A stretch of DNA of 64,000 bases from Mytilus edulis (lineage: Eukaryota), in assembly GCF_963676685.1 (NCBI RefSeq), contig NC_092353.1, positions 2,356,001-2,420,000 of the forward strand, in the 5' to 3' direction. Of the stretch, positions 13,706 through 35,700 are shown one piece after another; position 1 is the stretch's first letter, and each line of letters starts with the position of its first letter. Position numbers and translations under genes: made by a program. The notes under the pieces were generated by a model. The model did no database searches and was not told the DNA's origin. It was given only the letters and a program-made list of their open reading frames with translations.

Positions 13706-14978
13706 TACAAGTAAATACCGACCATGCTGTTATTTAGCACACGTCTACAGAACCTGGACTGATACAAGTAAATACTGAACATGCTGTTATTAAGCACACG
13801 TCTACAGAACCTTGACTGATACAAGTAAATACCGACCATGCTGTTATTTAGAACACGTCTACAGAACCTTGACTGATACAAGTAAATACCGACCATGCTG
13901 TTATTTAGAACACGTCTACAGAACCTTGACTGATACAAGTAAATACCGACCATGCTGTTATTTAGCACACGTCTACAGAACCTTGACTGATACAAGTAAA
14001 TACTGACCATGCTGTTATTTAGCACACGTCTACAGAACCTTGACTGATACAAGTAAATACTGACCATGCTGTTATTTAGCACACGTCTACAGAACCTTGA
14101 CTGATACAAGTAAATACCGACCATGCTGTTATTTAGCACACGTCTACAGAACCTTGGCTGATACAAGTAAATACCGACCATGCTGTTATTTAGCACACGT
14201 CTACAGAACCTTGGCTGATACAAGTAAATACCGACCATGCTGTTATTTAGCACACGTCTACAGAACCTTGGCTGATACAAGTAAATACCGACCATGCTCT
14301 AATTTATCACACGTCTACAGAACCTTGACTGATACAAGTAAATACTGACCATGCTGTTATTTAGCACACGTCTACAGAACCTTGACTGATACAAGTAAAT
14401 ACCGACCATGCTGTTATTTAGCACACGTCTACAGAACCTTGACTGATACAAGTAAATACCGACCATGCTGTTATTTAGCACACGTCTACAGAACCTTGAC
14501 TGATACAAGTAAATACCGACCATGCTGTTATTTAGCACACGTCTACAGAACCTTGACTGATACAAGTAAATACTGACCATGCTGTTATTTAGCACACGTC
14601 TACATAACCTTGACTGATACAAGTAAATACCGACCATGCTGTTATTTAGCACACGTCTACAGAACCTTGACTGATACAAGTAAATACTGACCATGCTGTT
14701 ATTTAGCACACGTCTACAGAACCTTGGCTGATACAAGTAAATACCGACCCTGCTGTTATTTAGCACACGTCTACAGAACCTTGACTGATACAAGTAAATA
14801 CCGACCATGCTGTTATTTAGCACACGTCTACAGAACCTTGACTGATACAAGTAAATACCGACCATGCTGTTATTTAGCACACGTCTACAGAACCTTGACT
14901 GATACAAGTAAATACTGACCATGCTGTTATTTAGCACACGTCTACAGAACCTTGACTGATACAAGTAAATACTGACCA
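13706..14978. repeat. 57-bp minisatellite, about 22 near-identical copies
   Basis: Unit tacaagtaaataccgaccatgctgttatttagcacacgtctacagaaccttgactga; degenerate units extend left to ~13520. Confidence 0.98.
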
Positions 14979-15414
14979 GTTGTCTAGTCACAGAACCTTG
15001 CTTGAATTTATATAATTTGAATGAAGTGTATCAATACGAATTACTGTGTCGACTATAATTCACAAATTATAGCAATAGATTACATTTAAATGACATGAAA
15101 TGAAAATAAAACAAAGAAGTATGTTTACCTTTCAGTTTAATAGCCTATGAATATCTAATGAATAATGCTTCAAGCTGGTAATTTATAAAACGCATAATAT
15201 TTTACCAAGGTCGTATGCACGTGACACGAGCCATGATTTGATTATCAGAAAATCAGAAAATATCCTCAATTTGATTTCAGACCGTGACGTGTGATGAATT
15301 GTATACGATTTACTATCATTAGTTAAAGTCATGAATTGATGGTCAGTGACTCCTTTTTGCATCATTCAGACAAAACAGTGATTTCATTTTGTCCTCTGAA
15401 ATAATAATATGAAG

Positions 15415-17460: not shown

Positions 17461-19839
17461 CTATATGTGGTTATTGACTTAACGGTCTCAATATTGTCTT
17501 GTCTATTATATGCGACTATTTGCCTGTTACAGTCTTGTCTTGTCTATTATATCTGAATGTTTGCTTGTCATAATCTTGTCTATTATATGTGACTATTTAC
17601 TTGTCACTTACAGTCTTGTTTTGTATGTGTCTTTGTTTGTTTTAGTCATTTTTTTTTTATTGTCTAGTATGTATGACTATTTATTTGTTAATCTTGTCTT
17701 GTCTACTTTATGTATCTGATCATTGTCACAGTCTTGTCTTGTTATACGTGCAATGGACGTTAGGCAACCAATCAATTAATCAACCTACTGTATATGACTC
17801 TTTTCCCCCAGTCATGTTTTGTTAAGTGTTTGTGGTCTTGTCTTATATACTAGTGCTATATTTGACTAAAGGTTTAACACAATAGTTTCTTGTCTGCTTT
17901 TTATGTTTATTTGTTTGTGTCAGTCCTGGTTAGCAAGAGTGGCTGTTTACTTGTTATATTCTTGTCTTGAGTATTTTGTGTGATTTTTGAATATATGTGT
18001 CTTATTATGTCTACTATTTGTGTGGTATTTTTGCTTGTCTCAGTCTTGTCTTCTTGTCGTATGCGACTATTTGTTCGTTCGAGTTATGCCTTCTAAGTGG
18101 GACTATGTGTGTATCACAGTTTTTCCGTAGTAATTTGTGTGACGATCCATAATATTTGTCCCAGTCTTCTCTACTGCATGTCAAGTTTTGCTTGTCCTGT
18201 ATGTCGTATATATGTGACTATATTTGCATGTCCCGTATTAGTCTGGTCTCAAGCGTGTGATTATGTACCTGGGCTTGTCTTTGTCTCAAGCATGTGACTA
18301 TGTACCTGGGCTTGTCTTTGTCTCAAGCGTGTGACTATGTACCTGGGCTTGTCTTTGTCTCAAACGTGTGACTATGTACCTTGTCTTACATGTTGTCAAA
18401 TGTGTCCGGCTATCTATTATTTGTTCCATAATTTTGTTCTCTACCATTTGTATCTATTTAAATGTGTTTGCCACAACCAAGTCTCGTCTATCGTTTGTCA
18501 CCATCTTATCTTATTATATCGATGCGTCTGTAACGTGGAGTTGAGCACGTTCCATATTTTATACGTCAGTTGGTCTTATTTGGCGGAAAATTGGCAATCA
18601 TACCAAACCTTCTTACTTGTATAAGTCTCGGTAAAATGTATTCACATATTTTTTGTAGGAATAGGACCATGCATAGATTAAAATACTGTCCGTCTACTTG
18701 TGTAGACACTTGTCTATTGTTGAAAACTCAAGCTTATATTTCTATAGATGTCTGTTAATCTTATTGTCTAGATGATTTGTTGTCGGATTACACATTACGT
18801 CTCTTTATATTGATACATCACTAAACAACATTGTATATACAACATGGAATCTCGCAAGAGGCATTGACATCTTATATGATCATATCCTTTCAACTGGAGC
18901 ATTTGAGAAATAAAGTTTTCTTGCGTCATCTCCGAATAGAAAACAAATATTTCATGTTTTTTTTTTTTAAAGTTAGTATTTTGATTTATATATTTTATCA
19001 GAGACAAAACAATATTGTAAATTTAGATCTACCAATATGCAGTAGAGTAATCTGACATTGTCATGCGTCACAGAACACATAACACCTCTGCGGTTTTTAT
19101 TGCAAGTGTCATTTCTGTTTGCCGAGACTTATGTTGTGACGTCCTTTCTTATACAAACTACCACTATATAAAGTTCTATAGTACAGATCACTTGTGGTTT
19201 TTAATTATATCCCCTGTAATCTCCTATCAATTTATGTTACCCTCAGATGTTGCCTTATTCTACTCTAGGGTAGCCATTATCAGACCAGTATCAGATGGGA
19301 AAGAAAACAATGCAAGCTTCCGTTCATTTACATATTAATATCCAAGATATTATATTTTATGCTTACACTATACAAACATTGCAAACCATAAAAAAAGCTA
19401 AGTTGAACCTTACTAAAACGAAGGTCATAGATTTAGCACGATATTTTTTTAGAATTAGACACCAACTTTCACTTCTTTCACCAAACGATGCTAGTATCCC
19501 ATGACAAAAAAATGTTATTTGACCGCAAAATAATTCATTCAACTTTTTTTAAAAGGAAAACACGATGTTCTCGTAGTTTATGAATTATATATCAATGAAA
19601 CAGCAACCGAACGACATAAAAATCAAGAGTTGGATACAGTATTTTATAACAATAACCAACGACAAGCTCTCAATCTTGATCTAAACATTGTGAAAAATTA
19701 AACAGAGAAAGATAAATCAAAAGACAAACAATGATATGGTTCCTGGTTTTGGACACGTACGTCTCGTCAGAAATGTAAATGAAAATGTCTTCACACCATC
19801 TAAGGGATATCGAAAATGCATATATAAAACAAAGATGAG

Positions 19840-20519
19840 TTATATAAATACTTTAGTTTTATTAAACATGTTTTACAAAATTGTAAATAGTATAAAAATT
19901 TACATAATACTTAATATATACACTCAAAAATAATTGCATAGATATTTCAAAACACGGGAATGTGTATTTTAAAAATTTAACTTAAAATTTCAAATATTTG
20001 TAAAACTTGTAAAACATATAACAAGGAAGCACTTTTATAATAATAAAAAACAATCTGTTTAAAACAGGTATGTCTTCTTGAACACATAGTCAATGCCACA
20101 ATTAATTTATGTCGATTATTGAACACATGCAGAATATATATAGTAAACATAACATTAATAACACGTGTATACTATAATGTGAACACATAGTATTGGTAAA
20201 TAACAAATACAATTATGCCAAAAAAACAGCGCACATTTGTAACTTTGAATTTAAAAAAAAAATACAGCCATTTCACTTACAACAGTGAGATTAATGTCAA
20301 ACAATCAATAAAATATGAACACATTTGGTTGGCCATTGAAAGTGTCATAGCTGCCTCGAGATCAATAACAAATACGGAAAGTCCTTTTGGAACAGTTCGG
20401 ATCAAATTCCATTCGGAAAACTCAGATTAATGTCCATTACCGATGATGCCACCACTTTAACCAATAATTAATGCCTGGAAGTCCTTCAGCTGGTGTCATC
20501 ATTCTCAACAAATAATATT
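19840..20519 (-). other. Predicted non-coding exon 2 (3'UTR) of the achaete-scute gene
   Basis: Minus-strand donor CAG|GTAAGC 9 nt after the stop (intron starts 21194); acceptor ttttattttataattgcag ending 20520; AATAAA at 19863-19858 followed by a U-rich tract. The 3' end is approximate. Confidence 0.6.
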
Positions 20520-21203
20520 CTGCAATTATAAAATAAAAATCATTTAACTAAAGTATTATTAATAAGTTTAAAATACTTTCATTTATTTAGTGTTTTTATT
20601 ACACTTTAAATAAATATAATGAGACAAATCTTACACTATTAAAACATCGTCACTCTCAGAACTTTTATACAAAAGTTTTTATATTAAACACTTTTATTAT
20701 TAAAGACAACCCTTTAAAGGTATGAAAACTGTTTTCATTGTCAAAATTAAAGAATTTTATTTCGCTTTCAAATGAAAACGTGGCTTTAATATTTTTATGA
20801 ATTAAATTGACTTTTTGACATTTTAGCTACATTTAATAACAATTGACATTCAGGTGTTTAAAAGGTCTAACGCTGTACACAAGTCTCTTTTGATCAAATA
20901 CCGACATCGGATGTATGCAACGTTAAATTTATATACAAAAAATTTAATAATTTCCTTCGTCATAGCTTTTCACATTTATTAAATAATAATGATTTCTGTT
21001 TCCTTTGCTTTTCATCTTTTTTTAATAATAAATCCATGTACATTTCTACCTTTTGATAAATGAAATGAGTCACCATCATATTGAATTAACTTTATGTACA
21101 AGACCCTAACATACTTGTAACAAAACAACATAATGGATTTTAGATTTAATAATAAAAATCCAGGTAGGAAAAACATGTAAAAATATATGCTTACCTGTAA
21201 AAT

Positions 21204-22172
21204 TTATAAGGGAAAAAATGACCTGAGATCAGGTAATTCGTCCTCCTCCGAGCTGAATGACTCTGATAGATTTTCTGAAGCGGACGGACTATGTTGCATA
21301 GAGATGTAACTGGTCGCTGGTGAATGCTGCATTGTCGGGCTATACTGGTACTGATAATTGTCCGAACTGTAACCAGAAGTTGTGGATCCGGTATCAAACG
21401 ACATTGTTTTATCCCCGGTGTAACCATTTTTCGTGTTGTCAAATGAAATGGTATTGTCCGGATTATAATTAAATGTTTGTAAAGGTTGGTATATCACTCG
21501 GGAATCCTGTATCTCATCAATTTCTTCATCAATGTTCTGATAAGCCATCACGTTATTAGTGTTATGATAGAGATTTCCACTTTGATAATTTTCCTTGTCA
21601 CTGAGACATTGTTCACTCTGACATACTGTCCTGTTGTCGTTGTTATTTTGATTATGTGAGAACTGTAAACTCTGGTGTATTTCACTGTCTACGTTTTGTT
21701 GTAATTTGCTCCTTGAATCATTTTCATTTTCGGAATCCATACTTTCACCATCAGTGTACATTAATAATTGTCGTAATTGTTTGATGTATTCAACAGCTGA
21801 CTTTAGTGTGTCAACTTTACTCAGTTTCTTGTTCTTTTTTCCGTCCGGGACATGATCCCTCAAAGTCTCGAATCCTGAGTTAACCATTTTCACTCTGTTT
21901 CTTTCCCTTTCGTTACGTCTAGCCACAGTTGCTGGTTGTGGTTTCGGAAGCAAATGGTGTAGTCCTTTTCCGTCTGTTCTACGTTTGCATCGCAGCATTT
22001 CTGGTTCTTTTGGTGAAAGTGGTTCCTGTTTCTTCAGCCGTCTTTGGGCTTGTACTTGTTGAGCTACTGTTGTTGTTGTTCTGACCAAAATAAACGGTCC
22101 TGTCATTTGAACTCCGTTATTATTTATTGAAGTTAAAGCTTGGATTGGAACCAAGCTTATGGTCGATGCCAT
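21204..22172 (-). CDS. ASCL: Achaete-scute family (ASCa / ASCL1-like) proneural bHLH transcription factor, uninterrupted CDS, 322 aa
   Basis: b[30 protein letters not shown]...[23 protein letters not shown]; upstream PEMLRCKRR motif typical of ASCL1/2-type proteins; acidic C-terminal motif [14 protein letters not shown] (cf. SPEEQELLDFTNWF). Confidence 0.96.
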
Positions 22173-22194
22173 GTTTGAAAAAGTTTCGTGTGCT

Positions 22195-22420
22195 AGTCGC
22201 GTGGTTGAATGTCGAAATTGCCTCGCGACCTGATGACAATATCGTCTGCTCTTAAAAACTTCGGAAATTCATAGATTGGGAGATTTAAATATCGCTGGCG
22301 TGATAAGCCCCGCCCATGCGTACAAAGTCACACCCGCGGCTTGCTTCTGTAAAAATTGTATAAACATTTAAATGTCCCTTAAATGTCAATCAACTTTCAA
22401 TCGTACGAACGTCGCGTGCC
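22195..22420 (-). promoter_or_regulatory. Achaete-scute proximal promoter with Hairy/HES site
   Basis: Minus strand: GGCACGCGAC (22420-22411), GC box GGGCGGGGC (22315-22307), TATA-like TATTTAAA (22292-22285), second CACGCG (22203-22198). Confidence 0.7.
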
Positions 22421-25035
22421 CTGATATAATCTTGCCTTAAAGAAAATTAAATGCATCAAAAGAGATGACAACGCCATTAGAGGTTGCTAACAGTACGCAT
22501 CGGTAAATTTTACCAATAAAAAACGATAAAGAATCGCAGATGGTCATATTAAAATTGTGATACTCCTAAATTAACAACCTGTTACTTCAATATGAATATT
22601 TGTTTTGTAAGATGCAATTATTAATATTCAAGAAACTTTACTGAACATACCGGTACATTGAACATATGATGTTCTCAACCAGTGAACTTAGTTTATTATT
22701 CGTCTCACTTCATTTAATTTCAATTTACATACACCCAAAAAATGGCGCCATCTTAGTTCATATCATAAAATGTATTTTAAATTAATTGTGACTTCTGATA
22801 CTTTGATCAATGTAAAGTTCTTAATTTGATTTCTGAGTATTCTAAATGATTACTATAATCTTTGAAGATTTTTGTCGGGTTTTCTCAATTTTTTTAGTCT
22901 ATCACTTTTGTCCAAAAAAAAATATGATACACTCATTTTTCAATGATACTTCCATTTGAGTAACAAAAAGAGTGTTTACAAAATTATTGGATTTGTTTGT
23001 TCAGTTAAATTAACAGTTTTTACAATTCAATACAATATGATTTTCGTTGATAAATATAATGCAAGATAATATTCTCGCCATAGACACATATACAGCATGT
23101 TTTAATGTTGTTAAAGTTATAAAGCTCCATATGGTAAACAGTTAAATTTTCTATTGAACAATATATAAAAAACCAAGTCATTTAAAACAAAGACGTTTTA
23201 AGTTTTTTTGTCTTTTCATTTACTGAAAAACTTTAAAACCATTTTTCTGTTTTACATTTATCTAATATTTAGTTCGTTATAAATGCTAAAATCTATATTT
23301 TTGTTTGCCCTATCACCCATTAACGGCATTGTTGAATATCTAATCGTCTCTTTTGAAAAAGGTATAAATGATAAGGTGGACACGTTCACGTAAGGACAAA
23401 TATAAGTCCACGCAGGTGGGTTTAAATATTAAAAAGGCCAGTACGATTGAAAACAAATTGGAATCCCGATTTTTGATATTTTGATATTAATATCAAAGTA
23501 ATTAAGATGTAATTTTTATCAGCGGGGAAACAATTTCTACATAAAACGAACCAAACCGTTAACTGACCCTTCTTGCTTGACTGACCAACAGAAATTTCAC
23601 GTTTTTTAATATATAAGCCCGATTAAGTACAACTTAAAGGGTGCATTAAACTATGAAAAGTATGCTTTAAATGGTCTTTATCATCAAGATACGAAGATTT
23701 AAATGTGAAAATTATTCTGTACCCATGGTATTTTTTTTTACAATATCTTACATATTATACACAAGCTATCTAGAAGCTCTCTACTGTAAAGAATATGTTT
23801 TTTGCACATGTATTTTTAAGTTACATCGGCCATATTTCACCTTAAAAAGAGTATGATATTTTAGTCATATAGACGGTCATAAAACTGTACTCAGAACTCG
23901 GAAAAGCGAGTACAGGATTGTGATTGGTTGATTTCTGAGTCTGAGTACAATTGTAATAAAATTTTAAAAGTTTATGGCTGTAGCCCCAAGTATCACCGTG
24001 TAGTTTGTAAGACATTTAACGTTGTATAGACGATGGTTTCACCTTAGCGGTTATTTAATTCTTCCCAGCACTCGTGCTTTCTTTCCGGAGTCAAAGATGG
24101 CTTACGTCGTAATTGGAATATTTTTTGGGTTGATCTTTGGTTTCAATGCTCTTCAACTTCATTTTTGATTTGACACTCCAACCGACTGATTCGAATTCTA
24201 CTGGGGGTTCTTCTGTAAGGCGGACTTACTGATAAGCCCAGTATCATTAATGCGTTTTTATATAATGATAAAATATCTGAATTACACTAGAACCCCTAGT
24301 TATTGTATTTATTGTTAATTTGTCTCGTCCTGAACATGCATGCTACATTTGCCACTGTAGGCATGAAGTAATCAAGACACTTGAATGTACCAAACTATGT
24401 CCGTACACCCTAAAACTCACGAATAAGACATTTCAAGGGAAAATTACACGCCCCCCCTCGTCCCCCCCCCCAAATTATGTAGCAAAGATAAAATTCCTAT
24501 GAATATAAATTTTTACGACGCCTTTTTTTATTGGACATGACACATTTGTGCTGGTGGATTTTTATATTTATCAAATGCACAAAAGTTCAACATTTAGACA
24601 GGACTCGAAATCTACCATGCAAGGACTATATACCATGGTTGCCGGAACATAAGTTATGTTTATAAGGTTACACTTCAAACATCCTGATAAATAGGACATG
24701 CCAATTCAAAGTTATATGCGCCAACATTTCGTTTAACTATTTGCTTTTTATTGATGTGAATAGATTCTTCATTAAATGAAACTGCATATTTTTGTAATTA
24801 AAAAAGATGTGCATACATTTATAACGGTCCTTCTTTGTGATAAGTCATTACAGTTGTGTTGTTTTCAATGAATATTCATATCAGCATAAATCACTGTCAA
24901 GTTTGTGGTTACGGGAGATCAAACTATGGACTGCTTGCAAGGAAGGTAAAAAGTAAAACATTAAAAAAAAGAAATTAAAATATTTGTCAGTCGGTGAGTC
25001 TACCTTGTTTAATTGTTTGACAGTATGATAAAATA

Positions 25036-32790: not shown

Positions 32791-35700
32791 TGATCCATAT
32801 CGAGTGTGTGGTATATTTGTTCGAGTTGAGCGTAAATACGCGTTATAAGTAACATTTATGTGTAACAGTCCTAATTCACGAACTTTGTTAGAAATTATCT
32901 GTATTTAAGTCGGAATGTTTTTGTCTTTGTCATTTTTGTAAACCGTTGTTTCTTGCATATTTTTATTTAAATACGTCCTACCCCTTTTACATTCGTGCTT
33001 GACATATTATACAATAAACCATGGTTGATGGTTGACAACCACATGTTTTACTTTAGATGCACTTAGATGTACTTATTTGTGCTGTTAACTTGTTAGGTTG
33101 TCTTCCAGTGTCATTAACTCTATCGTTTTGATCACAATACGTTAAATAAAAAATGTTAAGGAAGCATCAAATTCGTTTGTTTTTAAAAACATTTTACAAT
33201 CATGGTGGTATTGATATAGTAGTATTAGGAGGTTAAATGCTCACGTACTTTCGAGGTATAGAATTATCACCTGTTACAATTACCTAGCACCTACTGCAAC
33301 CCTCTTCATTGCAGTCTCGCTCAGATAATTAAATATGAGATGTTTTCAGTGTCTTTTTATCCCGTTTGTTTGTCTGACTTTTCATCCATCAATAGGACGC
33401 TTAGATAACATTATACATGTAGACAATAAAACAAGGAAGCAGTGATCATAATTGCACATTTTTATCAGACATTTCCGTTGCATCTTTAAAATGAAGATCA
33501 TTCATTAGATAATTCTAGGTATCTTGATATCCAACGAGTACCTAGTATACCGAAAGTAAGTCGAAACCACCCGAAAGTACAAACGATCACAATGTAATTG
33601 CAAGTCAGCTAAAAAATCCACCCTTCTATTTATTTCATTAATTTAAAAGTACTTTCTGGGTCTATTTTTTGCAAATTATCACAACGTTGTGAAATATCTG
33701 TGCGTTATAACTGTCATTTAAACTCTTCAACCTGAACAGGTACATGTATTTAACATCAATTAACGTTGTCTGGTGTATTAAACTTGCCTCTCAAATGATT
33801 AATAAGTGAAAGCGATAACATGTAATTACACATAGTCAGAGACATACAATTAAAGTACCATCTATTCACAAGACACGCGTTTTGTTATTTTATACATTTT
33901 ATGAAGAGAGGGTGCCACGGGTCTTTCTTCTCAATCCAATTAAGTATTTGAGAAATATAAGGTACATATCATGCTAACTTGTTGTAGGGAGAACTTGAAT
34001 ACTATACTTCAAGCTTATTTTTTTTAAGCAATAGGTCTTTGTTTTTGTTGTAGTGCTGCCTTTCTAGAGGAAAGTACTTATCAATACGGAAAAAAAACCT
34101 GCGTTATTATCATATTTGAAAGTTATTATGCATGCATCTTTTATCTGCAATAACGAGACAGAAACATCCATGTATATTATATATACTGTCCTGAACTTTA
34201 GCCAAAATCCTGCATATATATGAAATAATTGTCTGTATGTGAATTAAGCAAACACCAATCAGAAATCAATGAAATAATTTTGTATATATACTTATCTTTC
34301 ACCTGACTTACTACAAGCTTCTGTTTTACTTTATTTCTGCGATGAATCCACCTCGAATATTCAGGATCGCTATGTATACAGGACAAGTTGTACAAGACAG
34401 GTCCCACTCTCTGGAAGCCTCTAACATACCAGATATTAAATTAGCATTTTACAAGGAAATGTATTACGTGATTTGTAGCTTGATATGCAGTGAAAGGATA
34501 CAATTGTCAATAAAAGAAATCAAAACACAACAGATGGTGAAATATAGTGCATAAACACAACAGTTGGTATAGAGTTACCATACACACGATCGTACTAATG
34601 ATACCATTTAAATAAACACCGCTTTCATGACATGTAATATCTATCGTTAAACTTTAATTTCAATCACAAACTTTGAAGCTTTAGTTTTAATACTTTTGAG
34701 ATTCAATGATCCTGAATAAGACGAACTTTACTAGAATAAAGTGAAGCATGAAAATGTAACATGCAAAGCCGATATTATGAAATGAACACATCTTGTATCA
34801 CTTAAGATACAACATATTTGCATACGCATCATCGCTTGCTGTCCGTCATGAAACAAAGCAGGGCAGAATGTTGCTAATTATTGTTAAATTCATTCATCTC
34901 GATATTTTCAGTGAAAAGCCAGCCAATGTATATCCCAACGACCTTAAACATGATGAACAGTTATGTCTATTGTAATTAATTGATTAAAAATAATGTTATC
35001 CCCTGATTTGATTGGTGTATATCAGTGTCCTCACTTGCATTTCTCCCACAGTAAAACCATGCAGACACATGGGTGTGGTCGTCTGTTCAGAATGTGTAAT
35101 TATGTCTGCAAATTTTCATCTGAAACGATTGGGCGAATTGAAATCAATGTTAGAATGTTGGATTGCAAAATAATTTCAGATATTGCCTCTTACTATAAAT
35201 ACTAAGAATTGAACATGACAGAAAAACATATTTCAAATCGCCCATTGACTTGCAAACTAAAAAGAAATGGTACATTTAAAAATCTTCTTAAGGAACTGGG
35301 ATTGACTCGAACTTGCAGTAAAATGATCGCCACCTTATAAATAGATGATAAACCACGTGGTTATCTTGTTATCGACTCCTAGGAGTCGAGATTAAGAATT
35401 GAACGATGGACAGTTAGTGCGTGAATTTTTCTTGCTACCTGATTGGAAGATATTACGAGACGTGAATAATCAAAGTTTATTGATTGGTTAGGACAATCAA
35501 AACCTAGTAAATGTCCTTCAATCCCATAGAGTATCGGATTTGTTCTCTCTATTTTAGCAATTAGATTTTGCCTGGTCATTAATCCTGCATATTCACGATA
35601 TTGGTACACAGGTAATTTTTATTTATAAATAGTCGAATCTTCTGAAGTTTCGTAAACAACAACGTTAAACGATATATAATACTACATAACGTGTGACCTC

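What the first reader, a model, noticed from the sequence alone, without database searches (positions are those of the whole stretch)
20079..20324. Four perfect miR-317 8mer sites in the predicted 3'UTR of the proneural achaete-scute gene
Seen: TGAACACAT occurs at 20079, 20120, 20180 and 20316, i.e. AUGUGUUCA four times in 250 nt of the minus-strand transcript, in otherwise non-repetitive sequence. I noticed only one other TGAACACA in the window (~34783). Known: protostome miR-317-3p begins UGAACACAGCUGG, so its 8mer site is UGUGUUCA. A rough estimate at ~31% GC gives about 0.01 such sites per 700 nt. Inference: a dedicated miR-317 repression of achaete-scute in mollusc neurogenesis, analogous to K/Brd/GY-box control of fly Notch-pathway genes. 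I know of no description of this link.
Basis: partly seen in the sequence, partly recalled or inferred. Interest (0 to 1): 0.82.

Follow-up and report, generated by a model that had tools for sequence, protein, structure and literature searches.

The report
MicroRNA-317 sites in mussel proneural gene
The tail of a mussel's achaete-scute nerve-cell-fate gene carries four exact docking sites for the old protostome microRNA miR-317, and a distant clam shows a similar cluster, so this is a well-supported but still untested new microRNA-target pair of the ordinary kind.

Summary
TGAACACA(T) lies on the + strand at 20079, 20120, 20180 and 20316, which is UGUGUUCA in the minus-strand mRNA. The window holds only two other copies.

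The gene is a Mytilus achaete-scute bHLH gene with a single-exon CDS (22172..21208). RNA contigs from three studies and two species labels show a 675-nt GT..AG intron starting 13 nt after the stop. All four sites lie in the second exon, which is entirely 3'UTR (20519..~19953), and are unchanged in every contig.

That exon is single-copy. One site pair descends from an old 136-nt duplication; the others share no flanks. In 20,000 shuffles of the UTR the motif never reached three copies.

The same genome has a mir-317 hairpin with a perfect seed, inside the conserved mir-317/277/34 cluster. Papers report miR-317 expression in M. galloprovincialis.

A heterodont-bivalve orthologue (L009) has two 8mers and one 7mer-m8 within 336 nt downstream, all sense-strand. 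One has 8 nt of extra 3' pairing. Whether they lie in its mRNA is unproven.

No repression, co-expression or neurogenesis data exist. Verdict: a new member of a known kind, of moderate interest.

The parts
21208..22172 (-). Single-exon CDS of the achaete-scute (ASCL1-like) bHLH protein, 321 aa, stop TAA at 21210-21208, C-terminal motif [14 protein letters not shown]
   Evidence: Translation. Pfam HLH PF00010, E 3.5e-19. 100% identical to the M. galloprovincialis 'achaete-scute complex protein' and 93% to M. coruscus ASCL. Alignment with mollusc orthologues.
21195..22250 (-). Exon 1 of the transcript: 5'UTR, CDS and the first 13 nt of the 3'UTR. The 5' end lies at or beyond 22250.
   Evidence: RNA contigs X1 (21195-22244), X2 (21195-22250) and X10 (21195-22115).
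20520..21194 (-). 3'UTR intron of 675 nt, donor TACAG|GTAAGC, acceptor TTGCAG|AA, beginning 13 nt after the stop codon (by the usual rule, too close to the stop to trigger NMD)
   Evidence: The joint 20519/21195 'skips 675, CT..AC' appears in contigs of all three runs (table 5); sequence read. Low-depth contigs inside the intron (20815-21079, depth 3-4 against 43-70) fit pre-mRNA or retained intron.
19953..20519 (-). Exon 2, made entirely of 3'UTR. Contigs end at 19953 (X2), 19987 (X1) and 20065 (X10), and no depth is seen below 19862. Single-copy in the genome.
20316..20323 (-). miR-317 8mer site 1 in mRNA order (UGUGUUCA), with upstream flank ACCAAA
   Evidence: Unchanged in X1, X2 and X10.
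20180..20187 (-). miR-317 8mer site 2 in mRNA order, with UACCA 6 nt upstream (complementary to miR-317 nt 14-18). Paralogue of site 1 through the 136-nt duplication.
   Evidence: The variant at 20179 and the X1 'AT' insertion after 20186 both keep TGAACACAT.
20120..20127 (-). miR-317 8mer site 3 in mRNA order. It shares the 14-mer TGTGTTCAATAATC with the L009 site at 14888.
20079..20086 (-). miR-317 8mer site 4 in mRNA order, the most 3' of the four
20170..20441 (-). Two units of an old 136-nt tandem duplication (20170-20305 and 20306-20441), now 48.5% identical. The miR-317 site is one of two blocks kept perfectly.
   Evidence: (D3, D8).

Best explanation
The four UGUGUUCA motifs are canonical 8mer target sites for miR-317-3p in the 3'UTR of a Mytilus achaete-scute (ASCL1-like) proneural bHLH mRNA. 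Shown: the sites are exact complements of miR-317 nt 2-8 with an A opposite nt 1. They sit in the transcribed, spliced 3'UTR in sense orientation. The same genome encodes miR-317 within the conserved mir-317/277/34 cluster. Inferred: AGO-loaded miR-317 binds the four closely spaced sites (136, 60 and 41 nt apart), recruits the deadenylation and decay machinery, and strongly lowers ASC mRNA and protein wherever miR-317 is present. That would limit the proneural factor to a short pulse or to cells without miR-317. A sense-strand cluster of three seed matches downstream of the orthologous gene of a heterodont bivalve suggests that the link predates the split between pteriomorph and heterodont bivalves.
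For: The sites and their chance expectation come: never 3 or more copies in 20,000 shuffles, with a mean of about 0.04 per UTR. They are not a repeat or transposon.

The transcript structure, with all four sites in exon 2, appears in three runs from three studies and two species labels. The 8mers are invariant, while 8 substitutions and 3 indels hit other parts of the exon.

mir-317 evidence: one exact 19-nt match in the genome; Rfam RF00720 matched over the full model length, E 1.4e-4; the hairpin folds at -41.2 kcal/mol, z -9.0; mir-277 lies 10.6 kb and mir-34 14 kb downstream on the same strand. miR-317 reads are reported in M. galloprovincialis (PMC7773633; PMC11067994).

L009 is a heterodont orthologue: 66-69% identical to Mercenaria, Ruditapes and Mya and a reciprocal best hit to this gene. 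Its only three TGTGTTC words in 15.8 kb on both strands lie in sense orientation within 336 nt, downstream of the stop. Three within 400 nt occurred in 0 of 5,000 shuffles, and only one other triple was found in about 970 kb of control strand sequence.

The L009 site at 15216 adds 8 contiguous pairs to miR-317 nt 14-21 (p 0.0015). CCA, the complement of miR-317 U14-G16, lies within 12 nt upstream of 5 of 7 sites against a background of about 10%. All 7 sites share the mRNA-sense orientation. The UTR has no K, Brd or GY boxes and no mir-34 or mir-277 seed matches.
Against: There is no functional test. There are no data on where or when miR-317 and ASC are expressed relative to each other. The papers show miR-317 in haemocytes and in whole or adult tissue, not in neural precursors.

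The Rfam score of 30.7 bits is below the family's gathering score of 56.

The absence of variants in the 32 site bases across the Mytilus contigs is not significant on its own (about 50% by chance).

3' pairing of the Mytilus sites is not better than in shuffles (p 0.06-0.6). Predicted local accessibility is unremarkable, and low for site 20120.

The L009 sites lie 3.9-4.2 kb past the stop. Their place in the mRNA rests only on a GTAAGC donor 38 nt after the stop and a plausible acceptor near 14866.

Two of the four Mytilus sites are duplicates of one ancestor, and the CCA statistic is post hoc.
Confidence: 0.68

Rival explanations
1. The repeated (CCAAA)UGUGUUCA element is the binding motif of a sequence-specific RNA-binding protein, or of another small RNA with the same seed. 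It would control ASC mRNA stability, translation or localisation independently of miR-317.
For: All four Mytilus sites share a ninth base (A) that does not pair with miR-317 G9. A CCAAA flank recurs in 4 of 7 sites, so the conserved unit is longer than a seed. Strand specificity (7 of 7 in sense) fits any RNA-level reader.
Against: From my own knowledge, the core fits none of the RBP motifs I considered (Pumilio/FBF UGUA-type, Bruno, Musashi, Smaug, AU- or GU-rich elements). The exact 7-8-nt core with a terminal A is the signature of an 8mer seed site. The flank CCA/ACCA/AGAUACCA is itself complementary to miR-317 nt 14-21. A matching miRNA gene is in the genome.
Confidence: 0.12
2. The cluster is a neutral by-product of local duplication and chance in an AT-rich UTR and has no regulatory role.
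For: Sites 20180 and 20316 come from one 136-nt duplication. Genome-wide, triplets of the word are common in satellites: 1,896 matches against 2,609 for the reversed control. Variant-free sites across the Mytilus contigs are not significant.
Against: The duplicated units have decayed to 48% identity, yet the site is kept perfectly. The other site pairs share no flanks. The exon is single-copy and not a satellite. No shuffle of 20,000 reached 3 copies. An independent sense-strand cluster sits behind the heterodont orthologue.
Confidence: 0.1
3. The motifs act at the DNA level as transcription-factor sites of a downstream enhancer or silencer of the ASC locus. For example, xGTTCA resembles a nuclear-receptor half-site (a resemblance recalled from memory).
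For: Developmental genes often have downstream enhancers. A first-reader note describes enhancer-like grammar elsewhere in the window (untested).
Against: All 7 sites in two species have one orientation, that of the mRNA (p about 0.016 if orientation were free). They are exact 8-9-mers without the degeneracy usual for TF sites. They lie inside the exon, not in the adjoining intron or intergenic DNA.
Confidence: 0.05
4. The UTR acts on the miRNA rather than the reverse: it is a sponge or a target-directed miRNA degradation (TDMD) trigger for miR-317.
For: The L009 site at 15216 has a seed, a 3-nt bulge and 8 nt of 3' pairing (nt 14-21), which resembles TDMD-type architecture. Four sites on one mRNA could also titrate a miRNA.
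Against: The Mytilus sites lack extensive 3' pairing. A proneural transcription-factor mRNA is probably of low abundance: depth was 0 in the one raw RNA run sampled (X21). The pairing does not reach the miRNA's 3' end.
Confidence: 0.03

Closest known systems
K-box, Brd-box and GY-box motifs in the 3'UTRs of Drosophila E(spl)-C and Bearded-C genes, which are sites for miR-2/11/13, miR-4/79 and miR-7 (Lai and Posakony; Lai 2002; Lai et al. 2005; from my own knowledge)
   Same: Several exact 7-8-nt motifs, complementary to the 5' end of conserved miRNAs, are clustered in the 3'UTRs of genes of the Notch/proneural neurogenesis network and were recognised first as repeated UTR words.
   Different: There the targets are Notch-responsive repressors and Brd proteins, not the proneural activator itself. 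The miRNAs are different. This UTR has no K, Brd or GY box. The fly sites are validated experimentally and these are not.
Drosophila miR-317 (mir-317/277/34 cluster)
   Same: It is the same miRNA family, with the same seed and the same 8mer definition, UGUGUUCA (PMC11482908), and the same genomic cluster. In fly testis, loss of miR-317 raises Notch signalling, so the family already touches the Notch/proneural network.
   Different: No achaete-scute target is reported in the papers searched. The fly phenotypes concern germline tumours, immunity and behaviour, not neurogenesis.
Multi-site heterochronic UTRs (lin-4:lin-14, let-7:lin-41) and miR-9a:senseless in fly sensory-organ precursor selection (from my own knowledge)
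   Same: A developmental regulator is switched off or buffered by one miRNA through several sites in its 3'UTR. miR-9a:senseless acts in the same proneural circuit.
   Different: The lin-14 and lin-41 sites are mostly bulged or imperfect, whereas here there are four perfect 8mers. Nothing is known here about timing or phenotype.
Earlier miRNA-target prediction for an oyster achaete-scute gene (Cgi-Mir-375-P4 : CGI_10017647, miranda prediction, PMC7488030)
   Same: It is a computational miRNA-target prediction for a bivalve achaete-scute-like gene.
   Different: It names a different miRNA (miR-375) from a generic whole-transcriptome prediction, with no site cluster described. miR-317 is not mentioned in that paper.

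Membership tests
Canonical animal miRNA target site (8mer seed site) for miR-317-3p | Perfect Watson-Crick complement to miRNA nt 2-8, with an A opposite nt 1 | tested here: met
   The miR-317 3p arm read from this genome is TGAACACAGCTGGTGGTATCTTT (L001:1501-1523). All four sites read TGTGTTCA in mRNA sense.
Canonical animal miRNA target site (8mer seed site) for miR-317-3p | The site lies in the 3'UTR of a transcribed mRNA, in sense orientation, more than 15 nt past the stop codon | tested here: met
   Spliced contigs from three runs cover 19953-20519 joined to 21195-22250, and the GT..AG intron sets the strand. The sites are at positions 210, 346, 406 and 447 of the 580-nt spliced UTR.
Canonical animal miRNA target site (8mer seed site) for miR-317-3p | The cognate miRNA gene is present in the same genome | tested here: met
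   G000:C5:81836733-81836817: exact mature match, RF00720 E 1.4e-4 but below the gathering score, stable hairpin z -9, flanked by mir-277 and mir-34, the latter above its gathering score.
Canonical animal miRNA target site (8mer seed site) for miR-317-3p | The miRNA is expressed in the organism, in or next to cells that express the target | tested here: inconclusive
   Papers report miR-317 in M. galloprovincialis haemocytes (PMC7773633) and in all eight molluscs sampled (PMC11067994). It rises after metamorphosis in Rapana (PMC5714496). There are no data for neural precursors or larvae of Mytilus.
Canonical animal miRNA target site (8mer seed site) for miR-317-3p | The site is conserved in orthologous UTRs | tested here: inconclusive
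   The sites are identical in two Mytilus species labels, which are too close to be informative. A heterodont orthologue (L009) has 2 8mers and 1 7mer-m8 in sense orientation downstream, but their place in the UTR is inferred.
Canonical animal miRNA target site (8mer seed site) for miR-317-3p | Seed-dependent repression of the mRNA or protein by the miRNA | not testable with these tools
   This needs a reporter assay, AGO-CLIP or miRNA inhibition.
Achaete-scute family bHLH (ASCa / ASCL1-like) | A bHLH domain of achaete-scute type, with the conserved N-terminal and C-terminal motifs of mollusc orthologues | tested here: met
   PF00010 E 3.5e-19. The best named hits are achaete-scute or ASCL1-like proteins of molluscs, arthropods and vertebrates. 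The N-terminal [13 protein letters not shown] and the C-terminal [14 protein letters not shown] motifs are shared with scallop and oyster proteins. No phylogeny was run to place it among the ASCa paralogues.
mir-317 microRNA precursor (Rfam RF00720) | Score at or above the Rfam gathering score (56 bits) | tested here: not met
   The score is 30.7 bits, E 1.4e-4 in 3 kb, over the full model length 1-93. Identity is supported instead by the mature arm, which matches the family consensus through nt 21, by the hairpin fold and by synteny with mir-277 and mir-34. The loop and 5' arm diverge from the insect-dominated model.

The most novel reading that the evidence does not exclude
miR-317 repression of the ASCL1-like proneural gene is an ancient regulatory link, at least as old as crown bivalves (roughly half a billion years) and possibly lophotrochozoan-wide. 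It would be kept through site turnover and duplication, reinforced by 3' supplementary pairing (CCA/ACCA/AGAUACCA to miR-317 nt 14-21), and housed in a dedicated 3'UTR exon behind a conserved intron placed just after the stop codon. This would be the spiralian counterpart of miRNA control of the fly Notch/proneural network, acting on the activator itself.
Probability: 0.35. Interest if true: 0.62.

Novelty: new member of a known kind. Interest (0 to 1): 0.45.

Why it matters
Post-transcriptional control of proneural genes is well worked out in flies and vertebrates but almost unknown in spiralians, and miR-317 has few validated targets anywhere.

Four perfect 8mers in 245 nt is an unusually strong and clean prediction. 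It concerns a single-copy UTR exon, a known miRNA and a key neurogenic transcription factor. Reporters and miRNA inhibition in mussel or oyster larvae could test it directly.

If the heterodont cluster is confirmed, it would be one of the few miRNA-target pairs shown to persist across deep molluscan divergences. It would also tie miR-317, recently linked to Notch signalling strength in the fly testis, to the Notch/proneural circuit more generally.

The mechanism itself, seed-mediated repression, is entirely conventional.

Tried and rejected
Scans of genome contigs and viral contigs with the ASC alignment found nothing. The metagenome scan gave 80 loci, but only L009 was a bivalve orthologue with downstream sequence. 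L010 ends inside the CDS.

2. A genome-wide count of TGTGTTCA triplets was uninformative. It gave 1,896 matches against 2,609 for the reversed control, nearly all in satellites.

3. ASC paralogues in the same genome (L120-L130) have no cluster of sites within their 1.5-kb flanks.

4. Repeat or transposon origin was rejected.

5. The window has no Rfam family above its gathering score.

6. 3' supplementary pairing of the Mytilus sites is not significant. Predicted accessibility is unremarkable.

7. The shared 12-mer TTACAAATGTGC between the Mytilus exon 2 and L009:12955 was judged to be chance. About 0.3 such matches are expected (my own rough estimate), and it is not collinear with the sites.

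8. The second perfectly kept block of the old duplication (the AGATTAATGTC pair) varies between Mytilus contigs at 20424 and 20428, so it is probably not constrained.

9. The raw RNA run X21 gave no depth over the gene, so it gave no information on strand, ends or expression level.

10. Earlier scan notes held nothing bearing on this finding.

The 13-nt and 567-nt UTR pieces were joined only inside local scripts, for counting and shuffling.

Full report
**Observation.** TGAACACA occurs on the + strand at 20079, 20120, 20180 and 20316, each followed by T. The window holds two more copies, at 34783 (+) and 1369 (-). The word is not enriched window-wide (6 found, 5.06 expected), so the signal is the cluster: four copies in 245 nt on one strand.
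- Neither Tandem Repeats Finder nor the repeat finder places the sites in a larger repeat.
- The 567-nt exon that holds them matches only itself in the 1.37-Gb genome.
- In 20,000 dinucleotide-preserving shuffles of the 580-nt spliced UTR, the word appeared 0, 1 or 2 times in 95.8%, 4.1% and 0.1% of cases, and never more.
- Only 3 of 20,000 shuffles had any 8-mer with at least 3 G/C in 4 or more copies.

**Independence of the sites.** At an offset of 136 nt, segments 20170-20305 and 20306-20441 are 48.5% identical, against 29 +/- 3.9% at other offsets (z 5.0). The flanks of sites 20180 and 20316 are 48% identical (z 3.0), while all other site pairs are at background. Two sites therefore descend from one old tandem duplication, which leaves at least three lineages. 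The duplicated units have decayed almost to background, yet the 9-mer is intact in both, which itself suggests constraint. The only other intact block, AGATTAATGTC at 20288-20298 and 20424-20434, varies between Mytilus contigs (20424, 20428).

**The gene and its transcript.** The minus strand encodes a 321-aa bHLH protein (22172..21208; PF00010, E 3.5e-19).
- It is 100% identical to the M. galloprovincialis 'achaete-scute complex protein' and 93% to M. coruscus ASCL.
- Orthologues in scallops, oysters and gastropods share its N- and C-terminal motifs.
- Laid on 17600-22800, contigs from three runs (three studies, two species labels) each join 22250/22244/22115..21195 to 20519..19953/19987/20065.
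- The joint skips 675 nt with CT..AC on the + strand, which is GT..AG on the minus strand.
- The runs are only guessed to be RNA, but the splice shows a processed transcript and fixes its strand.
- The donor (TACAG|GTAAGC) lies 13 nt after the TAA. By the usual 50-nt rule (established knowledge) the exon junction should not trigger NMD.
- All four sites lie in exon 2, at UTR positions 210, 346, 406 and 447 of about 580.
- Low-depth contigs inside the intron suggest some unspliced RNA, in which the sites would still be 3'UTR.
- Across the contigs there are 8 substitutions and 3 indels in exon 2, and none alters an 8mer. The X1 'AT' insertion after 20186 and the 20179 variant both keep TGAACACAT. 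This is not significant on its own (about 50% by chance).
- The raw RNA run X21 had no depth on the gene.

**The miRNA.**
- The genome has one exact match to the first 19 nt of the miR-317 sequence I recalled, at G000:C5:81836781.
- The surrounding 85 nt match Rfam mir-317 (RF00720) over the whole model. The score is 30.7 bits, E 1.4e-4, below the 56-bit gathering score.
- It folds into a hairpin of -41.2 kcal/mol, z -9.0 against shuffles.
- mir-277 lies 10.6 kb downstream and mir-34 (57.1 bits, above its gathering score) 14 kb downstream, both on the same strand. As I recall it, this is the conserved protostome mir-317/277/34 cluster.
- The 3p arm reads UGAACACAGCUGGUGGUAUCUUU, so UGUGUUCA is its 8mer site. 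A Drosophila paper uses the same site definition (PMC11482908).
- miR-317 reads are reported from M. galloprovincialis haemocytes (PMC7773633) and from all eight molluscs in a survey that included this species (PMC11067994).
- In Rapana, miR-317 rises after metamorphosis (PMC5714496).

**Other species.** A metagenome scan with the ASC alignment returned one useful contig, L009.
- Its 336-aa ASC protein equals P0071 and is 66-69% identical to the Mercenaria, Ruditapes, Mya and Dreissena proteins. The source is therefore a heterodont bivalve of unknown species.
- Its best hit in the Mytilus genome is this gene (E 1.8e-30, next hit 3.4e-19).
- A GTAAGC donor lies 38 nt after its stop, echoing the Mytilus 3'UTR intron. 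A pyrimidine-rich acceptor lies near 14866.
- The only three TGTGTTC words in the whole 15.8-kb locus, on either strand, are at 14888 (8mer), 15074 (7mer-m8) and 15216 (8mer), all in sense orientation.
- Three such words within 400 nt occurred in 0 of 5,000 shuffles, and two 8mers within 400 nt in 0.18%.
- Across all 80 metagenome loci (486 kb, both strands) only one other triple of 7-mers exists.
- The site at 15216 is preceded, after a 3-nt gap, by AGAUACCA, which is complementary to miR-317 nt 14-21 (p 0.0015 against flank shuffles).
- The site at 14888 shares the 14-mer TGTGTTCAATAATC with Mytilus site 20120.
- CCA, the complement of U14-G16, lies within 12 nt upstream of 5 of the 7 sites, against about 10% of background windows. 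This statistic is post hoc, and some of the sites are duplicates of each other.
- ORFs in the L009 downstream region have no Pfam match.
- Whether the L009 cluster lies in the ASC mRNA remains an inference.

**Mechanism.** The shown steps are seed complementarity, location in a real 3'UTR, presence of the miRNA gene, and its expression in the species. The rest is inferred from established miRNA biology. AGO-miR-317 would bind four AU-rich-context 8mers spaced 136, 60 and 41 nt apart and promote deadenylation and decay. This would clear or damp ASC mRNA where miR-317 accumulates and so sharpen a transient proneural pulse. The Mytilus sites have no significant 3' pairing and ordinary predicted accessibility. 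The UTR has no K, Brd or GY boxes and no mir-34 or mir-277 seed matches.

**Rivals.**
- An RNA-binding-protein motif, or another small RNA with the same seed. The extended CCAAA flank and the constant ninth base (A) favour this, but the flank is itself complementary to miR-317.
- A neutral product of duplication and chance. This is weakened by the shuffles, the single-copy status of the exon and the heterodont cluster.
- DNA-level transcription-factor sites. This is weakened because all 7 sites have one orientation, are exact words and lie within the exon.
- A sponge or TDMD trigger. Only the L009 site at 15216 has that look.

**Novelty.** No paper in the library links miR-317 to achaete-scute or to proneural genes. 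One oyster study predicted miR-375 for an achaete-scute-like gene (PMC7488030). In fly testis, loss of miR-317 raises Notch signalling (PMC11482908), which is a thematic link only. This is a new, strong but untested member of a well-known kind of regulation.

**Housekeeping.** The spliced UTR was joined only inside local scripts for counting and shuffling. Database and genome searches used exon 2 or the CDS by reference.

Noticed in passing
window 20520-21194 (-); L009:11044-~14866: The ASC gene has an intron wholly within the 3'UTR, starting 13 nt after the stop. The heterodont orthologue has a GTAAGC donor 38 nt after its stop. A conserved intron just past the stop, close enough to escape NMD, that sets apart a 'regulatory' 3'UTR exon may be a feature of bivalve ASC genes.
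   Followed up: partly
G000:C5:81836733-81850875 (L001, L132, L134): The mir-317, mir-277 and mir-34 hairpins lie on one strand within 14 kb. As I recall it, this is the conserved protostome cluster, intact here in Mytilus.
   Followed up: yes
G000:C10:2273538-2273825 (+) and G000:C10:2302959-2303246 (-) (L120, L121): Two further achaete-scute-like bHLH genes lie 74 and 104 kb from this gene on the same chromosome, with two more at C10:1.67 Mb and 38.2 Mb. This is an ASC gene cluster, in line with the ASCa/ASCc linkage reported for lophotrochozoans (PMC5381572). None has a miR-317 site cluster within its 1.5-kb flanks.
   Followed up: partly
window 20288-20298 and 20424-20434 (-): A second block, GACAUUAAUCU in mRNA sense, is kept perfectly in both units of the old 136-nt duplication in the reference. 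The 20424-20434 copy varies in contigs X1 and X10, so constraint is doubtful.
   Followed up: partly
window 19957-19963 (-): ACAUUCC, which I recall as the 7mer-m8 match to the miR-1 seed, lies at the very 3' end of the UTR, 4 nt from the end of the longest contig. It may lie at or beyond the poly(A) site.
   Followed up: no
window 18590-18623: A 34-nt stretch is matched at 90-95% by many high-depth RNA contigs that continue into unrelated sequence. It is probably a fragment of an expressed dispersed repeat, unrelated to the ASC transcript.
   Followed up: no
window 34783-34791 (+): A fifth TGAACACAT lies 12.6 kb upstream of the ASC start, in the region where another first-reader note sees enhancer grammar. 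It is a single copy and within chance expectation for the window.
   Followed up: no
L029:8506-8688: This is the only other triple of miR-317-type 7-mers among the 80 metagenome ASC-related loci. It is antisense to, and upstream of, the bHLH match in a contig of unknown animal origin. I used it only as a control.
   Followed up: no
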